A stretch of 64,000 nt of DNA, from the IMG/VR virus record IMGVR_UViG_3300024239_000011, positions 62,001-126,000 of that record. The stretch is one strand, 5' to 3'. The position numbers and the translations under genes were made by a program. The notes beneath the pieces were generated by a model. The model saw nothing but the letters and a program-made list of their open reading frames with translations. It had not been told where the DNA came from and did not search any database. Shown one piece after another: positions 3,742-54,930 of this stretch (positions are counted from its first letter, which is position 1; every line of letters starts with the position of its first letter).

Positions 3742-4751
3742 CGCTATCAAAACTATGGAATATGATTGTGGAGATGGAGGAACCCATGTCCGCACAATTG
3801 TCTTTCCCATTTGAACCTGAGACCCAGCGGGTGCCTGAAATTCCCAATAAGCGTCAAGCGAGTTTGGGATTTCTCGACGCTATCACGGTGGCGCGACAGT
3901 ATTTCCCGGATACCAGTAAGGAAGAACTGGAATTCATCATTCAGAGCGAAACAGGTTGGCCATCGTTCTGGCACATTCCCCGCGATGGGGCAACTCCCGA
4001 GGAATGTTTTCGTACCCAACTACTCAACGCCGTGGCACGGCGACACGTTCGTTATTCCAACATGAAGATCATCGAAGCTGATCCTTATGCGGGCGTCGTT
4101 GATCGCATCGAATTGAAACCGGACGGGTTCGGACGATGCACTATCGAACTACCAGACCACACGGAAATCTACGTGGACCGGGATGGCATCAGCGAAGTTC
4201 GGTTTGCAGATGACGCCAAGATCATTTCGTTTGGCTCCTTAATGTTCGAGCGTGATAACGGGTCGGGTGGTTACCGGTCAGTTGCCCTGCCCAATGGACG
4301 GCAAATCAATATTAATCCCGAAGGCGACTATCAGATTGAGGACTACGCCTACCTAACCGATAAAACCGACCACCCACGAATTACCAAAGTCGATCAGCTT
4401 CGGATCAAGGACGGGCGATCCTGTATCATCGCCCTCCCCGATGGGTCGCAGATTCATGTGGGGAATAACGGCAACTACCAGATCGATGACCGCAACGCCG
4501 AGGTCATTTACCGCGCCAACCGCATCCGGGATTTCAACCGGTTCCTGAATGCCAGCGAGATCATGGAAGAGTTCGTCCGGTATGTTGGGGCACTTGGGGT
4601 AAAACAAGGCGATGTGTTGAACCTGCCAATCAGCTTGTTCATCAATTTCTTGGTGGTGAGAGCGGCAGATGCGGACGGCGAACCAACGCCTGATGTCGCG
4701 ATTGAAAACCATCCGGCATTAACATCAAAATGCCCACAATGTGGACGCTAA
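3738..4751 (+). CDS. hypothetical protein with three internal LP(D/N)xxxIx(V/I) repeats
   Basis: 337 aa; LPDHTEIYV, LPNGRQINI, LPDGSQIHV; hairpin terminator after stop. Confidence 0.75.
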   Translation: MTLSKLWNMIVEMEEPMSAQLSFPFEPETQRVPEIPNKRQASLGFLDAITVARQYFPDTSKEELEFIIQSETGWPSFWHIPRDGATPEECFRTQLLNAVARRHVRYSNMKIIEADPYAGVVDRIELKPDGFGRCTIELPDHTEIYVDRDGISEVRFADDAKIISFGSLMFERDNGSGGYRSVALPNGRQININPEGDYQIEDYAYLTDKTDHPRITKVDQLRIKDGRSCIIALPDGSQIHVGNNGNYQIDDRNAEVIYRANRIRDFNRFLNASEIMEEFVRYVGALGVKQGDVLNLPISLFINFLVVRAADADGEPTPDVAIENHPALTSKCPQCGR

Positions 4752-4937: not shown

Positions 4938-5738
4938 CTAGTCCTTTTGGGCAAGTTTTATGGCTTCTGTCAACATTTCACGGAGATCATTGATGACGGG
5001 GACTTGGTACCGTTCTGCGAGGCGTTTTAGATAACGCATTTTTATCGCAGTTTCAGGGAACCCAAGAACAGCCGTGGGCGCATCCGCATCGCCATGATGA
5101 TAATCACGCATTGCCATACCAAATTCGATATTGGTGGTATAACCGGGCATCGTATCATGTTCACGCGGAATCCAGAACGCACGAACCACGCCAGGAAGAT
5201 CAAACGCTTCCCATTCCCAGTCGATCTGGTTGTCGTAATTATCATGGGCAAGCCAGTCATGGCTTTCCGGGACTAATACATTTCCAGAAAAGCCAAGGTC
5301 GGACAAAATGTGGAGAGCTTCTGGGCGCCAGGACAAAACATTTTTGGCACGTGGTGTCGGACCCAGCAACATTATACATGGATCGGATTTGGCGGTGGTT
5401 AAGTCTTGTAGAGCATAGAACACCCGAATCTTGCTTACGGTGGCAGCCACCATCGTAAACGTGCCGTCATTGTACTTAAACCCTTGTGTCAAACGAGGTT
5501 TGAAAGCACGAGGCACGCCTTGATCCATCACGAACTGGATATTTACAACCTTAGTCAGGTCGAAAAGACGCCACTGTGGCAGCGATCCATTTGAGTCACC
5601 ACCAATCTGATAACCACGCATCAACGCCTTACCGGTTTGACTGGCGCCCACAATGTGAGGTTCCACTTCCCGATACTTACCATCATACTCAAAACTGACG
5701 ACGAACCGTTCAGCAATGGCTTCCGCAATTTCTTTCAT
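4938..5738 (-). CDS. WYL domain fused to nucleoside 2-deoxyribosyltransferase-like domain
   Basis: N-term FEYDGKYREVEPH...WRLFDL; C-term LLGPTPR..SWR...QIDWEW...FWIPR...TTNIEFG. Confidence 0.7.
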   Translation of the reverse strand: MKEIAEAIAERFVVSFEYDGKYREVEPHIVGASQTGKALMRGYQIGGDSNGSLPQWRLFDLTKVVNIQFVMDQGVPRAFKPRLTQGFKYNDGTFTMVAATVSKIRVFYALQDLTTAKSDPCIMLLGPTPRAKNVLSWRPEALHILSDLGFSGNVLVPESHDWLAHDNYDNQIDWEWEAFDLPGVVRAFWIPREHDTMPGYTTNIEFGMAMRDYHHGDADAPTAVLGFPETAIKMRYLKRLAERYQVPVINDLREMLTEAIKLAQKD

Positions 5739-17175: not shown

Positions 17176-17289
17176 TGGAGCGGGAGAAGGGATTCGAACC
17201 CTCGACATCAACCTTGTTAAGCCTACACCGTGACGGACACGCCTTATAGGCTTAGGCAAGGTTGCGCTCTTCCACTGAGCTACACCCGC
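17176..17289 (-). tRNA. tRNA-Gly(GCC) with 39-nt anticodon-loop insertion (17216-17254)
   Basis: removing the insert gives CAACC-TT-GCC-AA-GGTTG; U73-CCA; one acceptor mismatch. Confidence 0.85.
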
Positions 17290-23529: not shown

Positions 23530-25083
23530 TTACCAGTGTGCCAAGATCAGCGGCGTGTCTTGATAAGACTGCCAAATTCGTTCGGTGATATATGGCATCA
23601 TCGGATGTGCCAGACGTAGGCATTGATCGAGGCACCGCATAATCGTTCCCAATGCATCCATGTCGTTCTGATCGTACAAACGATCCTTGGACGCCTCGAT
23701 GTACCAATCGCAGAACTCGTGTTTGAAGAACAATCGGAACGCATCCGCCGCTGCTCGGTAATCAAATGCATCCAGGGCATTTGCCATAGTACGTTTTGTT
23801 TGATCGAGTGATGCGAGGATACGCAGATCATCAGGATGTTGAGACTCGTTCCAGGCAGATGGACGACCCATCCGGTCGAAATGACTGAGACAGAACCGCG
23901 AGGCTTGCCACAGTTTGTTTGCGAACCGTTTTGCAGAATCGAAAATATCGTTCGACAATCGGATATCCTGCCCGGCGGTACCGTTCTCCAAGAACCCGAA
24001 CCGCAAAGCGTCACATCCGAATTTTTCGATGATTAGCAGAGGATCAATGCCGTTTCCCTTCGACTTACACATTTTTTCCCCATTGGCGTCACGAATGATG
24101 CCGTGGAGATAGATGGTGTCAAATGCCATCTGATCGGTCAGGGCAAGCCCCATCATCAACATACGGGCACACCAGAAGAATAGGATGTCCGCTGCCGTCT
24201 CGATCATACTCGCCGGGTAGAAAGTTCGCAGATCGGGCGTGTCGTTTGGCCAGCCCAAAATGGCGAAGGGCCAAATTGCGGACGAGAACCATGTATCAAG
24301 GACATCGTGATCTTGTCGGATGTCATCCCCCAGAATAGCTCTGGCATCCGCCTCTGTACGTGCCGCGCAAAAAGCACCAGAACCGTTGTACCAAATCGGG
24401 ATACGGTGTCCCCACCAAATCTGACGCGAAATACACCACGGCTCGATGTTTTCGAGGAAATGACAGAAGGTTTTCCCTTCATATTCCGGGATAATCTTTA
24501 GTTCACCCGCATGATAACGTGCAAGAAGGTCGGTAGCCAGTTGACTAGTGTCCAACCACCACTGCCCATCCTGACGGTAAATCAATCCTTTTTCGAAACA
24601 CCGGTTGAACGCCTCTAGGGTGGCGGTGGGATGTTCGGGGCTAAGCGTATACCATTCGCGCGACCAATCACAGCTTGCGCCCAGACGGCGAATTTGCTGG
24701 GTGATGCGCCCACCCGTCGTTTTCTGCCATGCATCTGCTTTGGCAAAATACTGGTCACGGGTTGGTTCGGTAATCCCTTCGGCGGCAAGCTCAGCCTTAA
24801 TCTTAGCATCGGTTGCCAAACCCGCATGATCAGTACCGGGCTGCCATAGTGCATTAAAGCCCTGCATGCGCTTGTACCGGATCGTCGTATCCTGAAGGGT
24901 GGTGAAAAGTGCATGCCCCATGTGCAGTTGCCCAGTGATATTGGGCGGCGGCATTGGGATGTTGAAGGCTGGTGCCTCTGGGTTCATGCTTGGCTTAAAA
25001 AAGCCATTATTTTCCCAATGCGCGTAGATGTTCGGTTCTTCGGTTTTATAGTCGAAGTTCCGAGTTAGTTTGTTACGTCCCAC
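23530..25083 (-). CDS. valS: compact valyl-tRNA synthetase lacking CP1 editing domain and C-terminal coiled coil
   Basis: PPPNITGQLHMGHAL, PGTDHAG, WCISRQIWWGHRIP, DVLDTWFSS, DILFFW, KMCKSKGN; only 517 aa; start uncertain. Confidence 0.92.
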   Translation of the reverse strand: MGRNKLTRNFDYKTEEPNIYAHWENNGFFKPSMNPEAPAFNIPMPPPNITGQLHMGHALFTTLQDTTIRYKRMQGFNALWQPGTDHAGLATDAKIKAELAAEGITEPTRDQYFAKADAWQKTTGGRITQQIRRLGASCDWSREWYTLSPEHPTATLEAFNRCFEKGLIYRQDGQWWLDTSQLATDLLARYHAGELKIIPEYEGKTFCHFLENIEPWCISRQIWWGHRIPIWYNGSGAFCAARTEADARAILGDDIRQDHDVLDTWFSSAIWPFAILGWPNDTPDLRTFYPASMIETAADILFFWCARMLMMGLALTDQMAFDTIYLHGIIRDANGEKMCKSKGNGIDPLLIIEKFGCDALRFGFLENGTAGQDIRLSNDIFDSAKRFANKLWQASRFCLSHFDRMGRPSAWNESQHPDDLRILASLDQTKRTMANALDAFDYRAAADAFRLFFKHEFCDWYIEASKDRLYDQNDMDALGTIMRCLDQCLRLAHPMMPYITERIWQSYQDTPLILAHW

Positions 25084-25540: not shown

Positions 25541-25972
25541 CTAATCCCCAACAAAATTCACAACGTCGCTGATAAGGGTGTGTTGGTCAACACGCCCACC
25601 CGCCCTAAATTCATCATAGGTTAGCCACACCACTTCTTTGGTTTCCTTGGTGGGCTTACCCAGACCCTTAGGTTTCTTGATCTCAGCCACAAAGATGTAT
25701 AGGTCGAAATATTCGTCTCGCCCTTCTACCCGATCTTTCTTGGCAAAGCACAAGTTGCGAACGTTGTCTGCCTTAATCCCAAGTTCTTCAGAACCTTCCC
25801 GGATTGCAGCAGCTTCAATGGTTTCACCAAGGTCTTGTTTGCCTTTGGCAATTTGGGGCAATACTCCACCAAAACCCGCTTTTGACGGTACCATAAACAA
25901 CATACGCAAAATACCATTATCAATGTAATAGGGTACTAACCCAGCACGATTTGTCGTTGAAAGTCCCTTCAA
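25541..25972 (-). CDS. Nudix hydrolase
   Basis: KGKQDLGETIEAAAIREGSEELG; GGAGG plus TTG start; CTAAATA late core. Confidence 0.85.
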   Translation of the reverse strand: MKGLSTTNRAGLVPYYIDNGILRMLFMVPSKAGFGGVLPQIAKGKQDLGETIEAAAIREGSEELGIKADNVRNLCFAKKDRVEGRDEYFDLYIFVAEIKKPKGLGKPTKETKEVVWLTYDEFRAGGRVDQHTLISDVVNFVGD

Positions 25973-26066
25973 TTGGTACCTCCCGCCGTTCTTTATATTT
26001 AGACTTAAACGTCCAATGGCAAGCAAATAATACCACCAATTTGCGGTATATTTGCTTGCCATGGCA

Positions 26067-26672
26067 TCATTTCCACTGGGTGCGGCGCTGCTGCTTCCAA
26101 TTCTTCTGCGGGCGCCGCCAGTAATCATCCCAGACAGTCGGCAGGCACGCCTTGCGACGACGACCACGAGCCTTGATTCGATATTCGACCGCATCTTCAT
26201 CGTAGTTCAGGAAATCGTTCTCACGAATCTCCTGGGTCGTTGCCATGTGACGAAGCGACTGGCACTTCCAGTGACGGCGGCAACGGATGCCCTTGACCGG
26301 ACCATTCCGGAAATCCGTCTCCGGATCGTAGTTAAAACGGGACCACTGCGTGCGGTTCGGGCACCCAAGCTGGAAAAACCGTTCCACAATGGTTTCCGGC
26401 GCAATCACCAGCCCCAATTCATCCAGAAGGACAAACTGCCCGCGCGTCCACGACGCCGGTTCCAGGGAGCTACGAATGTACGCCATCCGCGCAACACGGA
26501 CGATCTCACGATGAAACGTGGGTTCGTCCATCAAGGAAGTCTTAACCACCCCATTGTAGGCAATATAAATGAATGGACGACTTGCCCGAGATTTCAGGAA
26601 AGCATCCAAACTTTCATAGACCCACGTTTCCTTGCTGTGGATGTCCTTGAGAGTGACTTCATACTTGTACAT
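26067..26672 (-). CDS. hypothetical protein, paralog of 26887..27471
   Basis: shared C-terminal GPV.G...TTQE.RENDFLNYDEDA.EY.I.ARG...LP..WDD...KNWK.QR.T.W. Confidence 0.8.
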   Translation of the reverse strand: MYKYEVTLKDIHSKETWVYESLDAFLKSRASRPFIYIAYNGVVKTSLMDEPTFHREIVRVARMAYIRSSLEPASWTRGQFVLLDELGLVIAPETIVERFFQLGCPNRTQWSRFNYDPETDFRNGPVKGIRCRRHWKCQSLRHMATTQEIRENDFLNYDEDAVEYRIKARGRRRKACLPTVWDDYWRRPQKNWKQQRRTQWK

Positions 26673-26753
26673 ATTGGTTCTCCTTTAACGCTAATTGCGT
26701 TAACGGAAACCCAAATATTCCTCGCGAATAACGTACATTTTATTCTCCGACGT

Positions 26754-26880
26754 TGATGGACGCTGCCGGATTTGAACCGCGCTCGGCTCCGTCGAGCCTA
26801 TCCCAGTTGGTCAAATACCCGTCCAGGGCGCCCCATAGATGGTGGAGCGCGTGGGGATCGAACCCACTGACCAGCGCCCT
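26754..26880 (-). ncRNA. circularly permuted alanine-type tRNA-like element (tmRNA-TLD-like or YrlA-like)
   Basis: T arm, GCGCTCC-A-CCA, TCTAT, then GGGGCGC pairing with G3-U70; second T arm downstream. Confidence 0.65.
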
Positions 26881-26886
26881 AAGTTG

Positions 26887-27471
26887 TTAACGCCAGCGGG
26901 TTTTCCGCTGACGCTTCCAGTTTTTTTCGTGGTGGCGACGCTGAGCGAAATCGTCCCAGGTGTCGGGTAATTCCTTATAGCGGCTACCACGTGCCCGAAT
27001 ATGGTACTCTCGGGCATCTTCATCGTAGTTCAGGAAATCGTTTTCACGATGCTCCTGGGTGGTGCGGATGCCCTGGCAGAAACGACCATGGCGCTTGTGA
27101 ACGCCGGGCACCGGACCACACCGGAAATTCTTGGCGTAGGTCCAACCCTTCTTGCGCATCCACTCAGTTTCAACAAGTTCGTGGGTCAGGTGCCCATGAT
27201 ACAGGGCGACCCACAGCACGGCTTCCGGCTGAATGATGTGCGCACCGGTCTGATCACACAGGTACCAACCATCACGCTGCTCGGTATAATCCTCGAAGCT
27301 GCTCAAACCGCACTGCGGCTTGTCCAGCATGTCGCGATACACATACCGATACTGGGTCTGGTTAAAAAAATCCTGAAACGAATCGAAACTGGCTTGGTAG
27401 TAGCAGATTTCGTAAACGCCGCGCCACCGGCTCCAATAAATTTGCTTCAGGATGACAGGTCCGTTGTACAT
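26887..27471 (-). CDS. hypothetical protein, paralog of 26067..26672
   Basis: same basic, Trp-rich C-terminal domain. Confidence 0.8.
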   Translation of the reverse strand: MYNGPVILKQIYWSRWRGVYEICYYQASFDSFQDFFNQTQYRYVYRDMLDKPQCGLSSFEDYTEQRDGWYLCDQTGAHIIQPEAVLWVALYHGHLTHELVETEWMRKKGWTYAKNFRCGPVPGVHKRHGRFCQGIRTTQEHRENDFLNYDEDAREYHIRARGSRYKELPDTWDDFAQRRHHEKNWKRQRKTRWR

Positions 27472-27640
27472 GGTTTCCTCCTAGAGACGAAGCGTCCCTA
27501 ATGGAAACCGGCATACTCCCGAATGTTCATGACACGGACTCCCGTGGTTGATGATGTCCTTATAGCGATATTTACTAGCGCCGTCAATATCTGGCGTTGT
27601 AATCACCTAAAAATCATGTATCCTCACGCCGTTATTATGG

Positions 27641-34421: not shown

Positions 34422-34505
34422 TGGCGATCCTGAGAGGATTCGAACCCCCCTTTTCAGCATCCGACTACGGTTAAGCGGGTAGAAGCCGCCCCCGGCTACA
34501 GGATC
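34422..34505 (-). tRNA. rearranged tRNA-Arg(UCU)-like gene
   Basis: perfect acceptor and T arms; anticodon arm 8 nt after acceptor; GGAT-GC-TGAAAA after it. Confidence 0.7.
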
Positions 34506-36412: not shown

Positions 36413-36487
36413 TGGTGGAGTAAACGCGAATCGAACGCGCCGCAACCGCATTGCGAATGCAGTTCGCCCCCTTGGTCATGCTACCCC
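36413..36487 (-). tRNA. tRNA-Ala(CGC)
   Basis: G3-U70, loop TT-CGC-AA. Confidence 0.88.
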
Positions 36488-36548
36488 AATGTGATTAATT
36501 GTGGTTGATCCACTAGAGTGATATTATCCTCATCCGAAAGGGGAGGAC

Positions 36549-37968: not shown

Positions 37969-38056
37969 TGGAGACGCGAGTGGGAGTCGAACCCACCTGA
38001 CCTTTCGGTACAAACGGTTTTGCAGACCGCCGACTAAACCGCTCATCCATCGCGCC
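37969..38056 (-). tRNA. tRNA-Cys(GCA) with class II arm
   Basis: GCGGT-CT-GCA-AA-ACCGT; arm ACC-GAAA-GGT; U73. Confidence 0.85.
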
Positions 38057-38065
38057 CGTTTAAAT

Positions 38066-54636: not shown

Positions 54637-54930
54637 TGGATCGGGGAGAGGGATTCGAACCCCCATAAAGTGGACCCTTACCACTTCGACTTTCGCCGCC
54701 CTCTTTCGAGGTTTGTGGTCTGGACTTTATCTTCACCATAGCTTGCGCCGTAGGTGCTGCCCGTCAAGTCTCTACACCTTCCGCTCTCGCGGCTTGGCTC
54801 GGGATTGGCATTTTACAGCGTTCCCCGAATTTGAGCAGTTCTACATCAAAGGTTTCCCTTTAAGCATCCGGTTTTCCTCTGTGTGGGAGGAAGGTAAAAA
54901 CCACTGGTCCTACCGTTAGACGATCCCCGA
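54637..54930 (-). tRNA. tRNA-Gln(UUG) interrupted by a group I intron
   Basis: exons 54897-54930 and 54637-54676 join to a 74-nt cloverleaf with loop TT-TTG-GT. Confidence 0.8.
54677..54896 (-). ncRNA. group I self-splicing intron, about 220 nt, no ORF
   Basis: P AAATTCGGGGAA, Q AATCCCGAG, R AGAGACTTGACGG, S AAGATAAAGTCC; P7 GACTT/AAGTC; P9.0 ACCAC/GTGGT; terminal G. Confidence 0.9.

What the first reader, a model, noticed from the sequence alone, without database searches (positions are those of the whole stretch)
26067..27471. Circularly permuted Ala-type tRNA-like RNA between two paralogous genes
Seen (minus strand): GCTGGTCA, T arm, GCGCTCC-A-CCA, 5-nt TCTAT, GGGGCGC, CCTGG, GGTATTTGACCA. 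The acceptor strands pair 7/7 with G3-U70 and A73 but in 3'-before-5' order; TGGTCA/TGACCA closes the module; a second T arm follows. The flanking ORFs share a near-identical basic, Trp-rich C-terminal domain. Known: alphaproteobacterial tmRNA is permuted in this order, and YrlA Y RNAs have a T arm followed by a closed acceptor stem. I see no ANDN-type tag frame; a short frame MYVIREEYLGFR with its own RBS follows. Inference: a minimal tmRNA mimic or Y-like RNA with dedicated partner proteins.
Basis: partly seen in the sequence, partly recalled or inferred. Interest (0 to 1): 0.75.

Follow-up and report, generated by a model that had tools for sequence, protein, structure and literature searches.

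The report
Nested two-headed tmRNA-like phage RNA
A 543-kb phage carries a 126-nt RNA gene that looks like the tRNA-like head of the ribosome-rescue RNA tmRNA, written in circularly permuted order, without any tag message, and nested inside a second tRNA-like stem; two other phages have the same odd design, but it is not tied to the two neighbouring protein genes.

Summary
I also found an outer 7-bp helix (GGGCGCU/AGCGUCC) that pairs the start of the RNA with the strand just after the second T arm. The permuted alanine-type acceptor hairpin is therefore nested inside a second acceptor/T-arm module. Two other phage tRNA arrays (L217; L095, from a 345-kb phage) carry the same 122-126-nt design with compensatory changes. 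A covariance model built without L217 finds it at 62.6 bits. No tag frame is shared, and Rfam's permuted-tmRNA model matches only the T arm, acceptor and linker (21.6 bits, cut-off 47). I read it as a CDS-less, permuted tmRNA-like RNA, a new variant of a known kind. Function is inferred: RNase P processing, alanine charging, and interference with or tag-free use of trans-translation. The phage encodes a full SmpB, but L095's phage does not. The "dedicated partner proteins" idea fails. A close strain keeps both paralogs and lacks exactly the 137-nt RNA cassette, and distant homologues of the proteins lack the RNA. The short frame MYVIREEYLGFR is a conserved leader uORF of the downstream gene. 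There is no Ro gene and no transcript evidence.

The parts
26749..26885 (-). 137-nt cassette: the RNA core plus 6 nt upstream and 5 nt downstream; present in this genome and absent from a close strain
   Evidence: read laying joint 26748|26886 in one 2,130-nt X4 contig (depth 47.7) that carries both flanking ORFs
26754..26879 (-). 126-nt core of the nested tmRNA-like RNA, from the outer 5' strand to the A-UCA tail
   Evidence: model R1 140.9 bits end to end; single copy in the genome
26873..26879 (-). Outer acceptor-like helix, 5' strand GGGCGCU
   Evidence: pairs 7/7 with 26764-26758 including G3-U; compensatory changes at 6 of 7 positions across three phages
26868..26872 (-). GGUCA, 5' strand of the short helix (P2a-like) that closes the inner tRNA-like domain
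   Evidence: complementary to UGACC at 26813-26809; analogous 4-bp pairings are possible in L217 and L095 but are weakly supported
26851..26867 (-). T arm 1: GUGGG-UUCGAUC-CCCAC
   Evidence: 5/5 pairs; aligned to the T arm of Rfam tmRNA_permuted
26840..26850 (-). Inner acceptor 3' strand GCGCUCC, then A73 and CCA
26835..26839 (-). 5-nt linker UCUAU between CCA and G+1; ends in U as in the other members and in phage permuted tmRNAs
26828..26834 (-). Inner acceptor 5' strand GGGGCGC; pairs 7/7 with 26850-26844 with G3-U70
26814..26827 (-). D-loop analogue CC-UGGAC-GGG-UAUU; a shortened form of the tmRNA consensus cuGGaUUCGACgg
   Evidence: one search compared with the model consensus shown
26809..26813 (-). 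UGACC, 3' strand of the closing helix
26785..26798 (-). Hairpin GGCUC-GACG-GAGCC, in the position of an anticodon arm but with a 4-nt loop
   Evidence: hairpins at the same place in L217 (5 bp, 15-nt loop) and L095 (4 bp, 4-nt loop)
26765..26781 (-). T arm 2: CGCGG-UUCAAAU-CCGGC; the stem pairs at only 3 of 5 positions here, but 5/5 in L217 and L095
26754..26764 (-). Outer helix 3' strand AGCGUCC followed by A-UCA
   Evidence: the tail is U-UCA in L217 and A-CCA in L095
26700..26738 (-). Leader uORF MYVIREEYLGFR* of the downstream gene; not part of the RNA
   Evidence: a uORF of the same type and spacing, plus a hairpin that pairs with the SD, is found in all 5 family members examined
26067..26672 (-). 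Downstream paralogue (201 aa), phrog_12793, function unknown
26887..27471 (-). Upstream paralogue (194 aa), phrog_12793, function unknown; its own leader uORF MNIREYAGFH* lies at 27530-27498

Best explanation
The locus is a 126-nt structured RNA gene of a rare family found in phage tRNA arrays. It is a circularly permuted tmRNA-type tRNA-like domain with no tag message. That domain consists of T arm 1, the 3' acceptor strand with ACCA, a 3-5-nt linker, the 5' acceptor strand with G3-U70, and a shortened D-loop analogue. It is nested inside a second acceptor/T-arm module made of the outer 7-bp helix and T arm 2. SHOWN: the anatomy; the nested rather than tandem pairing, supported by compensatory changes in three phages; the absence of a shared tag frame; its position on the tRNA strand of tRNA arrays; its behaviour as a discrete 137-nt cassette; a full-length phage SmpB elsewhere in the genome. 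INFERRED: it is transcribed within the polycistronic array. RNase P cuts 5' of both G+1 positions, with the outer module acting as the handle that frees the unit. Exonucleases trim the linker back to ACCA. The result is a two-piece RNA held together by the outer helix, the inner acceptor helix and the short closing helix. The host AlaRS charges the inner head through G3-U70/A73. With SmpB and EF-Tu it competes for stalled ribosomes or for SmpB itself. Because it has no resume codon or stop codon it cannot deliver a degradation tag. The likeliest effect is therefore to dampen or bypass host trans-translation tagging during infection, as reported for the CDS-less tmRNA of mycobacteriophage DS6A. 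Its likely origin is a tandem duplication of a small standard-order TLD RNA that was then fixed in a strand-swapped fold. The confidence given (0.5) is for the whole statement; that it is a real structured RNA family with this nested fold I hold at about 0.85, and the specific role in trans-translation at about 0.4.
For: Anatomy and fold: (z = -4.0). Partial match to tmRNA_permuted and beta_tmRNA over the T arm, acceptor and linker. Phage permuted tmRNAs with 1-5-nt linkers, one with the identical UCUAU, score 76-108 bits and carry ANDN-type tags. Two further nested members exist: L217 and L095. Core lengths are 126, 124 and 122 nt. The outer helix is paired in 21 of 21 cells with compensatory changes at 6 of 7 positions. 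The inner helix pairs 7, 6 and 6 of 7 with G3-U70 in all three. The tandem reading pairs only 4+3, 2+3 and 5+6. In the tool count, 92% of cells pair against 41-59% when partners are slid, 10 of 22 pairs change on both sides, and 0 of 500 shuffles reach the observed values. Model R1, built from the window and L095 only, finds L217 end to end at 62.6 bits (E 2e-13); non-members score 43 bits or less. All three lie in tRNA arrays on the tRNA strand. There are no promoter-like or terminator-like sites between the flanking ORFs. The cassette is a precise indel. The phage SmpB scores 176 bits, is full length and has the basic C-terminal tail. No conventional tmRNA reaches its cut-off in the genome. 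Small standard-order TLD RNAs with the same UGGAC-GRG-UAUUUG motif occur in other phage arrays. Within L095 and L217 the two T arms are nearly identical to each other, which fits a duplication origin. CDS-less tmRNA forms, and inhibition of host tmRNA by the DS6A form, are reported in PMC11915505. That G3-U70 minihelices are charged by AlaRS, and that RNase P prefers U at -1, is established knowledge that I did not test here.
Against: There is no transcript evidence: only DNA runs hold the RNA, and the contigs from RNA runs lie in ORF B. The RNA is dispensable in a close strain. The Rfam score is far below the gathering score and covers only generic acceptor and T-arm features. The D-loop analogue is 4-5 nt shorter than the tmRNA consensus, so SmpB binding is uncertain. 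The complete 345-kb phage that carries L095 has no SmpB. In this window T arm 2 is degenerate and the outer tail is AUCA rather than ACCA. L217 and L095 were found with patterns that required CCACCA, GGGG and UGGA, so conservation of those motifs is partly ascertainment; only U70, the outer helix, T arm 2 and the overall length were free to vary. There are only three members.
Confidence: 0.5

Rival explanations
1. It is a two-headed tRNA-like decoy or processing element unrelated to trans-translation. It might act as bait for host enzymes or defence nucleases and transferases that attack tRNA acceptor ends, or as a sink for AlaRS, RNase P or the CCA-adding enzyme.
For: It has two acceptor/T-arm modules. 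Both are alanine-type in the window and in L095. It always sits inside large phage tRNA arrays. L095's phage has no SmpB. The D-loop analogue departs from the tmRNA consensus.
Against: The inner head keeps tmRNA-style features: the permuted order with a short linker as in phage tmRNAs, the UGGA..GRG motif, and G3-U70 with A73. The outer head is not conserved as alanine-type, since L217 has C3-G70 and a U-UCA tail. No known defence system has been linked to such an RNA.
Confidence: 0.2
2. It is non-functional debris from rearrangement or duplication of tRNA or tmRNA-like genes in a fast-evolving tRNA array.
For: It is present or absent between close strains. T arm 2 is degenerate and the outer tail is AUCA in the window. 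No expression data exist. The family is very rare: it is absent from 26 other large phage records.
Against: Three phages whose helix sequences differ keep the same nested pairing through compensatory changes, and keep nearly the same length. The tandem reading is not maintained. A model built without L217 recognises it end to end.
Confidence: 0.15
3. It is a true tmRNA with an unconventional tag, for example the frame AERGSNPAASINVGE* or the frame that runs into MYVIREEYLGFR*.
For: Open frames do exist downstream of the inner 5' acceptor strand. The phage has SmpB and no other clear tmRNA.
Against: No frame is shared among the three members, and none ends like the controls (ANDNVAFALAA*..MAA*). 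There is no room for pseudoknots. The candidate frames run through T arm 2 and the outer helix. The stop codons lie outside the 137-nt cassette, and the second frame is the leader uORF of the next gene.
Confidence: 0.05
4. It is the RNA partner of the two flanking paralogous proteins.
For: It lies between the two paralogues. Their conserved C-terminal region is basic and Trp-rich.
Against: A close strain has both proteins without the RNA. Homologues in L006/L007, L008 and L010 have no such RNA beside them. L217 and L095 have the RNA without these proteins. The protein family has 317 cluster representatives against three RNAs.
Confidence: 0.03
5. It is a Y RNA-like (YrlA-type) RNA that works with a Ro protein.
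For: A T arm followed by a closed acceptor stem and a D-loop-like segment recalls the tRNA-like module of YrlA. This is my recollection, not a test.
Against: No TROVE/Ro gene was found in the complete 543-kb genome, while the control genomes gave hits. No Y-RNA family hit at E <= 10. The ACCA, short linker and G+1 point to cleavage into a free acceptor end rather than a closed loop.
Confidence: 0.02

Closest known systems
Permuted (two-piece) tmRNA genes, Rfam RF04321 tmRNA_permuted, including the short-linker forms common in phage contigs (L015, L028, L104, L116 and others)
   Same: The gene order is T arm, 3' acceptor strand with ACCA, linker, 5' acceptor strand GGGG.., D-loop analogue, then a helix that closes the domain. 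It has G3-U70 and A73. The linker is as short as in phage forms, and L116 has the same UCUAU.
   Different: There is no tag reading frame and no pseudoknot region. The D-loop analogue is UGGAC rather than UGGnUUCGAC. The domain is enclosed by a second acceptor-like helix with its own T arm, which no described form has. It scores 21.6 bits against a cut-off of 47.
CDS-less tmRNA forms: mitochondrial permuted tmRNA, ~65-bp plastid forms, and the mycobacteriophage DS6A form that inhibits host tmRNA (PMC11915505)
   Same: It has a tRNA-like domain only and no tag. One precedent is phage-borne and has a proposed interfering role.
   Different: Per that paper's tables, the described 'permuted, no CDS' forms are counted separately from the 79 bacteriophage sequences, and the DS6A form is described as similar to the small standard-form plastid genes. 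None is described with a second nested acceptor/T-arm module. I did not compare sequences with DS6A.
Small standard-order TLD RNAs (~88 nt) in other phage tRNA arrays (L053/L094/L257, L084)
   Same: They share the 5' motif GGGGnnn-NN-UGGAC-GRG-UAUUUG, G3-U70, ACCA, the lack of a tag, and a location in tRNA arrays.
   Different: Their gene order is standard and they have a single acceptor stem. They are the likely ancestral type; the window RNA looks like a strand-swapped tandem derivative.
YrlA-type bacterial Y RNAs
   Same: A T arm next to an acceptor-like stem that is closed in the gene order (a resemblance from memory).
   Different: There is no Ro gene and no family hit. The CCA, linker and G+1 suggest cleavage.
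Circularly permuted tRNA genes of the red alga Cyanidioschyzon merolae (from my own knowledge)
   Same: The 3' half lies before the 5' half, with a short linker joining the acceptor strands.
   Different: Those genes rebuild complete tRNAs with anticodon arms through a circular intermediate made by eukaryotic or archaeal splicing enzymes. Here there is no anticodon arm, and the context is a bacteriophage.

Membership tests
tmRNA, permuted form (RF04321) | Permuted gene order: T arm and 3' acceptor strand with CCA upstream of the 5' acceptor strand | tested here: met
tmRNA, permuted form (RF04321) | Alanine identity: G3-U70, A73, CCA | tested here: met
   U70 is present in all three members, although the search patterns left that position free
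tmRNA, permuted form (RF04321) | Score at or above Rfam's gathering score | tested here: not met
   21.6 bits against 47; only model positions 36-93 of 213 matched
tmRNA, permuted form (RF04321) | D-loop analogue UGGnUUCGAC followed by helix 2a | tested here: inconclusive
   UGGAC-GGG is 4-5 nt shorter than the consensus. A 5-bp closing helix GGUCA/UGACC is present in the window; only 4-bp candidates exist in L217 and L095
tmRNA, permuted form (RF04321) | Tag reading frame with a resume codon and an in-frame stop | tested here: not met
   no frame is shared among the three members; the controls show ANDNVAFALAA* and ..MAA*
tmRNA, permuted form (RF04321) | Pseudoknot-rich body | tested here: not met
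   only 43-46 nt lie between the inner 5' acceptor strand and T arm 2, and they are taken up by the D-loop analogue, the closing strand and one hairpin
tmRNA, permuted form (RF04321) | SmpB cofactor available | tested here: inconclusive
   a full-length SmpB is in this phage but none is in the complete phage of L095; host SmpB is unknown
CDS-less tmRNA (TLD-only forms) | tmRNA-type tRNA-like domain without a tag CDS | tested here: met
   the TLD assignment rests on resemblance, not on a family score
CDS-less tmRNA (TLD-only forms) | Aminoacylation with alanine and binding to SmpB | not testable with these tools
   needs in vitro charging and binding assays
tRNA (RF00005) | Cloverleaf with an anticodon arm; called by tRNA detectors | tested here: not met
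   no call by ARAGORN or Rfam at the locus; the hairpin loop is 4 nt
Y RNA / YrlA | Ro (TROVE) partner gene and a Ro-binding stem | tested here: not met
   no TROVE match in the genome; no Y-RNA hit
Nested family defined here (window, L217, L095) | Outer 7-bp helix joining the 5' end to the strand immediately 3' of a second T arm, and enclosing a permuted acceptor hairpin | tested here: met

The most novel reading that the evidence does not exclude
The three RNAs are a previously undescribed gene form of tmRNA-like RNA. It is a selected, strand-swapped tandem duplicate that matures into a two-piece RNA with two acceptor/T-arm heads. Both heads are alanine-type in two of the three members. This would be the predicted intermediate of gene permutation (duplication followed by partial loss) kept as a working molecule. 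It could present two tRNA-like heads to the translation machinery or to SmpB at once.
Probability: 0.3. Interest if true: 0.75.

Novelty: new variant of a known kind. Interest (0 to 1): 0.6.

Why it matters
Huge phages are known to carry tmRNA and SmpB (PMC7162821), and a few tagless tmRNA forms are known (PMC11915505). What the tagless forms do is unresolved. This locus adds a compact, covariation-supported design that standard detectors miss: ARAGORN and Rfam at gathering score call nothing here. It sits in a phage that has a complete SmpB and no recognisable tmRNA. If it is processed and charged as inferred, it is a simple system for testing how a phage can tune or block host ribosome rescue without a tag. 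It would also be a natural example of how permuted RNA genes arise from tandem duplicates. In addition, the work removes a tempting but wrong link between the RNA and its neighbouring genes.

Tried and rejected
- **Detectors.** ARAGORN on the window and the whole genome gives no tmRNA. At the 80% threshold it gives one call at the locus that runs into ORF B, which I rejected.
- **Rfam.** The standard, alpha, cyano and permuted tmRNA models over the genome give nothing at or above cut-off, and nothing lies beside smpB.
- **219-nt RNA at genome 159105-159323(-).** I considered it as the phage's real tmRNA. It matches only the acceptor stem and T arm and lacks the D-loop motif, so it remains unresolved.
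- **Pattern scans.** I ran six pattern scans of viral contigs, one of metagenomes and one of bacterial and archaeal genomes. Most hits were coding sequence, tandem tRNAs or canonical permuted tmRNAs.
- **6/7 outer-helix candidates.** L129, L067 and L075 are tandem tRNAs. L300 (40 bits) is also tandem tRNAs.
- **BLAST.** Searching the locus and the RNA core against 50,697 deposited phage genomes gave no match.
- **Alignment.** MAFFT put the outer strand out of register. I counted pairs with an anchored script and on a model-made alignment instead.
- **RNA runs.** Contigs from RNA runs match ORF B and its leader, not the RNA.
- **Flanking proteins.** No Pfam match and no PDB sequence match. The AlphaFold model has pLDDT 69 and no fold match (best E 1.8). 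Atlas look-alikes have TM <= 0.32. I assign no function.
- **Phage AlaRS.** None found.
- **Not run.** I did not run complex prediction for SmpB with the RNA, because the tool gives no verdict for RNA partners.
Full report
**Setting.** The window is bases 62001-126000 of a 543,035-bp virus record that CheckV estimates as complete. It is a huge phage with 66 ARAGORN tRNAs, 64 of them on the minus strand, and 37 of these lie in the window. Neither ARAGORN nor Rfam at gathering score calls anything between the two ORFs at 26067-26672 and 26887-27471.

**The observation.**
- UGGUCA;
- T arm 1 (GUGGG-UUCGAUC-CCCAC);
- GCGCUCC-A-CCA;
- the linker UCUAU;
- GGGGCGC;
- CC-UGGAC-GGGUAUU;
- UGACCA;
- a second T loop.

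The two acceptor strands pair 7/7 with G3-U70, and the 3' strand comes first. GGGCGCU at 26879-26873 pairs 7/7 with AGCGUCC at 26764-26758, again with a G-U at position 3. That 3' strand lies immediately after T arm 2 and is followed by A-UCA. The permuted acceptor hairpin is therefore nested inside a second acceptor/T-arm module. In the window, T arm 2 has a consensus loop but only 3 of 5 stem pairs.

**Relation to tmRNA.** A permissive Rfam search gives partial matches to tmRNA_permuted (RF04321; 21.6 bits, cut-off 47, model positions 36-93 only) and to beta_tmRNA. Both cover just T arm 1, the acceptor strands and the linker. A pattern scan of viral contigs showed that permuted tmRNA genes with linkers of 1-5 nt are common in phages; L116 even has the same UCUAU. 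Those genes score 76-108 bits over the full model and carry canonical tags such as ANDNVAFALAA*. The window RNA differs from them in three ways:
- its D-loop analogue is UGGAC, where the consensus reads UGGnUUCGAC;
- it has no room for pseudoknots;
- it has a hairpin and a second T arm where the tag should be.

**Relatives.** Scans that keep the T loop, the CCA, a short linker and UGGA found two more RNAs of the same design. One is L217, on a 10.6-kb metagenome contig with 23 tRNAs. The other is L095, from a complete 345-kb phage, where it sits directly between a tRNA-Pro and a tRNA-Ala. Core lengths are 126, 124 and 122 nt.
- **Outer helix.** It pairs in 21 of 21 cells, with compensatory changes at six of seven positions: GGGCGCU/AGCGUCC, GCCACUU/AAGUGGC and GGGCAUC/GAUGUCC.
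- **Inner helix.** It pairs 7, 6 and 6 of 7, with G3-U70 in all three.
- **Tandem reading.** Treating the halves as two separate units pairs only 4+3, 2+3 and 5+6 of 7.
- **Chance.** A perfect outer helix arises in 1-2.6% of shuffled flanks. Among 25 other loci with a permuted acceptor followed by a T arm, only these two relatives have one.
- **Cross-validation.** A covariance model built from the window and L095 alone finds L217 end to end at 62.6 bits (E 2e-13). Tandem tRNAs and canonical permuted tmRNAs reach 43 bits at most.
- **Tool count.** On the model-made alignment, 92% of cells pair against 41-59% when partners are slid, 10 of 22 pairs change on both sides, and no shuffle out of 500 reaches the observed values. 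That alignment leans towards the model, and there are only three sequences.

L217 and L095 were found with patterns that required CCACCA, GGGG and UGGA, so conservation of those letters is partly ascertainment. U70, the outer helix, T arm 2 and the length were not imposed.

**No tag.** None of the three reading frames after the inner 5' acceptor strand is shared among the members, and none ends like a tmRNA tag. Both window paralogues and their homologues in L006, L008 and L010 are each preceded by a 10-13-codon uORF. Its stop codon lies 25-30 nt before the main ATG, and its last codons form the 5' strand of a hairpin whose 3' strand is the main gene's Shine-Dalgarno sequence. The stems covary.

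**The flanking genes are not partners of the RNA.** The two ORFs are paralogues, 44% identical over 142 aa. They belong to phrog_12793, a family with 317 cluster representatives and no Pfam, PDB or fold match. Three lines of evidence separate them from the RNA.
- A 2,130-nt contig from run X4 comes from a strain whose upstream ORF differs at 47 of 715 positions. It joins 26748 directly to 26886, with only one ambiguous base at the joint. It keeps both ORFs and lacks exactly 137 nt, which is the RNA core plus 6 and 5 flanking nt. X4 holds no contig covering the RNA.
- Homologues of the proteins elsewhere have no such RNA beside them.
- L217 and L095 have the RNA without these proteins.

It also shows that the RNA behaves as a discrete cassette.

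**Context for function.** The phage encodes a full-length SmpB with the basic C-terminal tail (176 bits). No conventional tmRNA reaches its cut-off anywhere in the genome or next to smpB. A 219-nt RNA at genome 159105-159323 has an alanine-type acceptor stem and a T arm but no D-loop motif, so it remains an unresolved alternative partner for SmpB. The phage has no AlaRS and no Ro/TROVE gene. The complete phage of L095 has neither SmpB nor a tmRNA, so a phage SmpB is not a requirement of the family. No promoter-like or terminator-like site separates the RNA from the flanking ORFs on its strand. Only DNA runs hold the RNA, so there is no evidence of expression.

**Mechanism.** The structure, the nesting and the lack of a tag are shown. 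The rest is inferred from established properties of tRNA-like substrates:
- RNase P cleavage 5' of G+1 on an acceptor/T-arm stack, with U at -1 as seen before the inner GGGG in all three members;
- exonucleolytic trimming of the linker, as in two-piece tmRNAs;
- charging of G3-U70 minihelices by AlaRS.

Processing at both heads would give two pieces of about 50 and 85 nt. They would be held together by the outer helix, the inner acceptor helix and the short closing helix. The inner head would carry a chargeable ACCA end. The outer module would serve at least as the handle that frees the unit from a polycistronic transcript. Without a resume codon or stop codon the RNA cannot complete trans-translation. 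I therefore consider interference with host tagging, or tag-free engagement of stalled ribosomes, the most likely role. The CDS-less tmRNA of phage DS6A is reported to inhibit the host tmRNA (PMC11915505).

**Origin.** Small standard-order TLD RNAs of about 88 nt with the same UGGAC-GRG-UAUUUG motif occur in other phage tRNA arrays. The 3' two-thirds of the nested RNA has their layout. Within L095 and within L217 the two T arms are almost identical to each other. In L095 the tandem reading still pairs 5 and 6 of 7. A tandem duplication of such a gene, followed by loss of one body and fixation of the strand-swapped pairing, explains the design. It matches the accepted route to permuted genes.

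**Verdict.** The RNA is a real, rare, structured element. It is best filed as a new variant of a known kind, and its function is untested.

Noticed in passing
window 26670-26738 (-) and 27469-27530 (-); L006 ~4938-5003; L008 ~750-820; L010 ~585-640: Every examined member of the phrog_12793 family has a 10-13-codon leader uORF (MYVIREEYLGFR*, MNIREYAGFH*, MIMIFHGGTGFH*, MSSKVFLRKLEFR*, MNKVFVNIHD*). Its stop codon sits at the foot of a covarying hairpin that sequesters the main gene's Shine-Dalgarno sequence. This looks like a translational-coupling or attenuator device.
   Followed up: partly
genome 159105-159323 (-), outside the window (L005 1501-1719): A 219-nt RNA in standard order with GGGGGCG...CGCCUCC-ACCA (G3-U70), a good T arm and a 173-nt insert. 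It scores 28.4 bits on RF00023 but lacks the tmRNA D-loop motif. It could be a divergent tmRNA or an interrupted tRNA-Ala-like gene.
   Followed up: partly
window ~36413-36490 (-): An uncalled, atypical tRNA-Ala: acceptor GGGGUAG/UUACUCC-ACCA with G3-U70, anticodon loop UUCGCAA (anticodon CGC), and no recognisable D stem. Both ARAGORN and Rfam tRNA missed it.
   Followed up: partly
L053 2759-2847 (-), L084 ~4138-4225 (+), L094, L257/L237: Small standard-order tmRNA-like RNAs (~88 nt, no tag) lie directly after ordinary tRNAs in other phage arrays. They share the GGGGnnn-NN-UGGAC-GAG-UAUUUG start and score 28-30 bits on RF00023, below the cut-off.
   Followed up: partly
L095 940-1014 (-): Directly upstream of the nested RNA in the 345-kb phage lies another alanine-type element (GGGGGCA...GGCCUCC-ACCA). 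ARAGORN calls it tRNA-Ala with its anticodon at an unusual position (30), and a second tRNA-Ala follows at 1099-1173.
   Followed up: no
window 34422-34505 (-): ARAGORN reports a tRNA with a four-base anticodon (ctta) and an undetermined amino acid. It is a possible frameshift-suppressor-type or degenerate tRNA.
   Followed up: no
window 37972-38057 (-): Rfam matches tRNA-Sec (RF01852, 50.6 bits, cut-off 47) where ARAGORN calls an 88-nt tRNA-Cys(gca). Several other tRNAs in the array are unusually long (83-111 nt, e.g. 17179-17289).
   Followed up: no
window 54697-54900 (-): A group I intron match (RF00028, 52.1 bits, cut-off 50).
   Followed up: no
window 23530-25083 (-) and 25541-26050 (-): A 517-aa class I aminoacyl-tRNA synthetase-like ORF (tRNA-synt_1 plus an anticodon-binding domain; short for a Val/Ile/Leu enzyme) and a NUDIX hydrolase lie just downstream of the locus. 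The NUDIX gene is also the neighbour in the 85%-identical contig L009.
   Followed up: no
window 26279-26467 and 26576-26740: Contigs from a wastewater metatranscriptome (X6) and from small RNA-type runs of 'organism A' (X5) match ORF B and its leader with one mismatch each, although the phage comes from a subsurface metagenome. These could be cross-sample carry-over or a widespread relative.
   Followed up: no
window ~27044-27016 and ~26209-26181 (-): The two paralogues share a 29-nt identical DNA run (aacgatttcctgaactacgatgaagatgc) that encodes NDFLNYDEDA, although they are only 44% identical overall. This suggests gene conversion or strong constraint.
   Followed up: no
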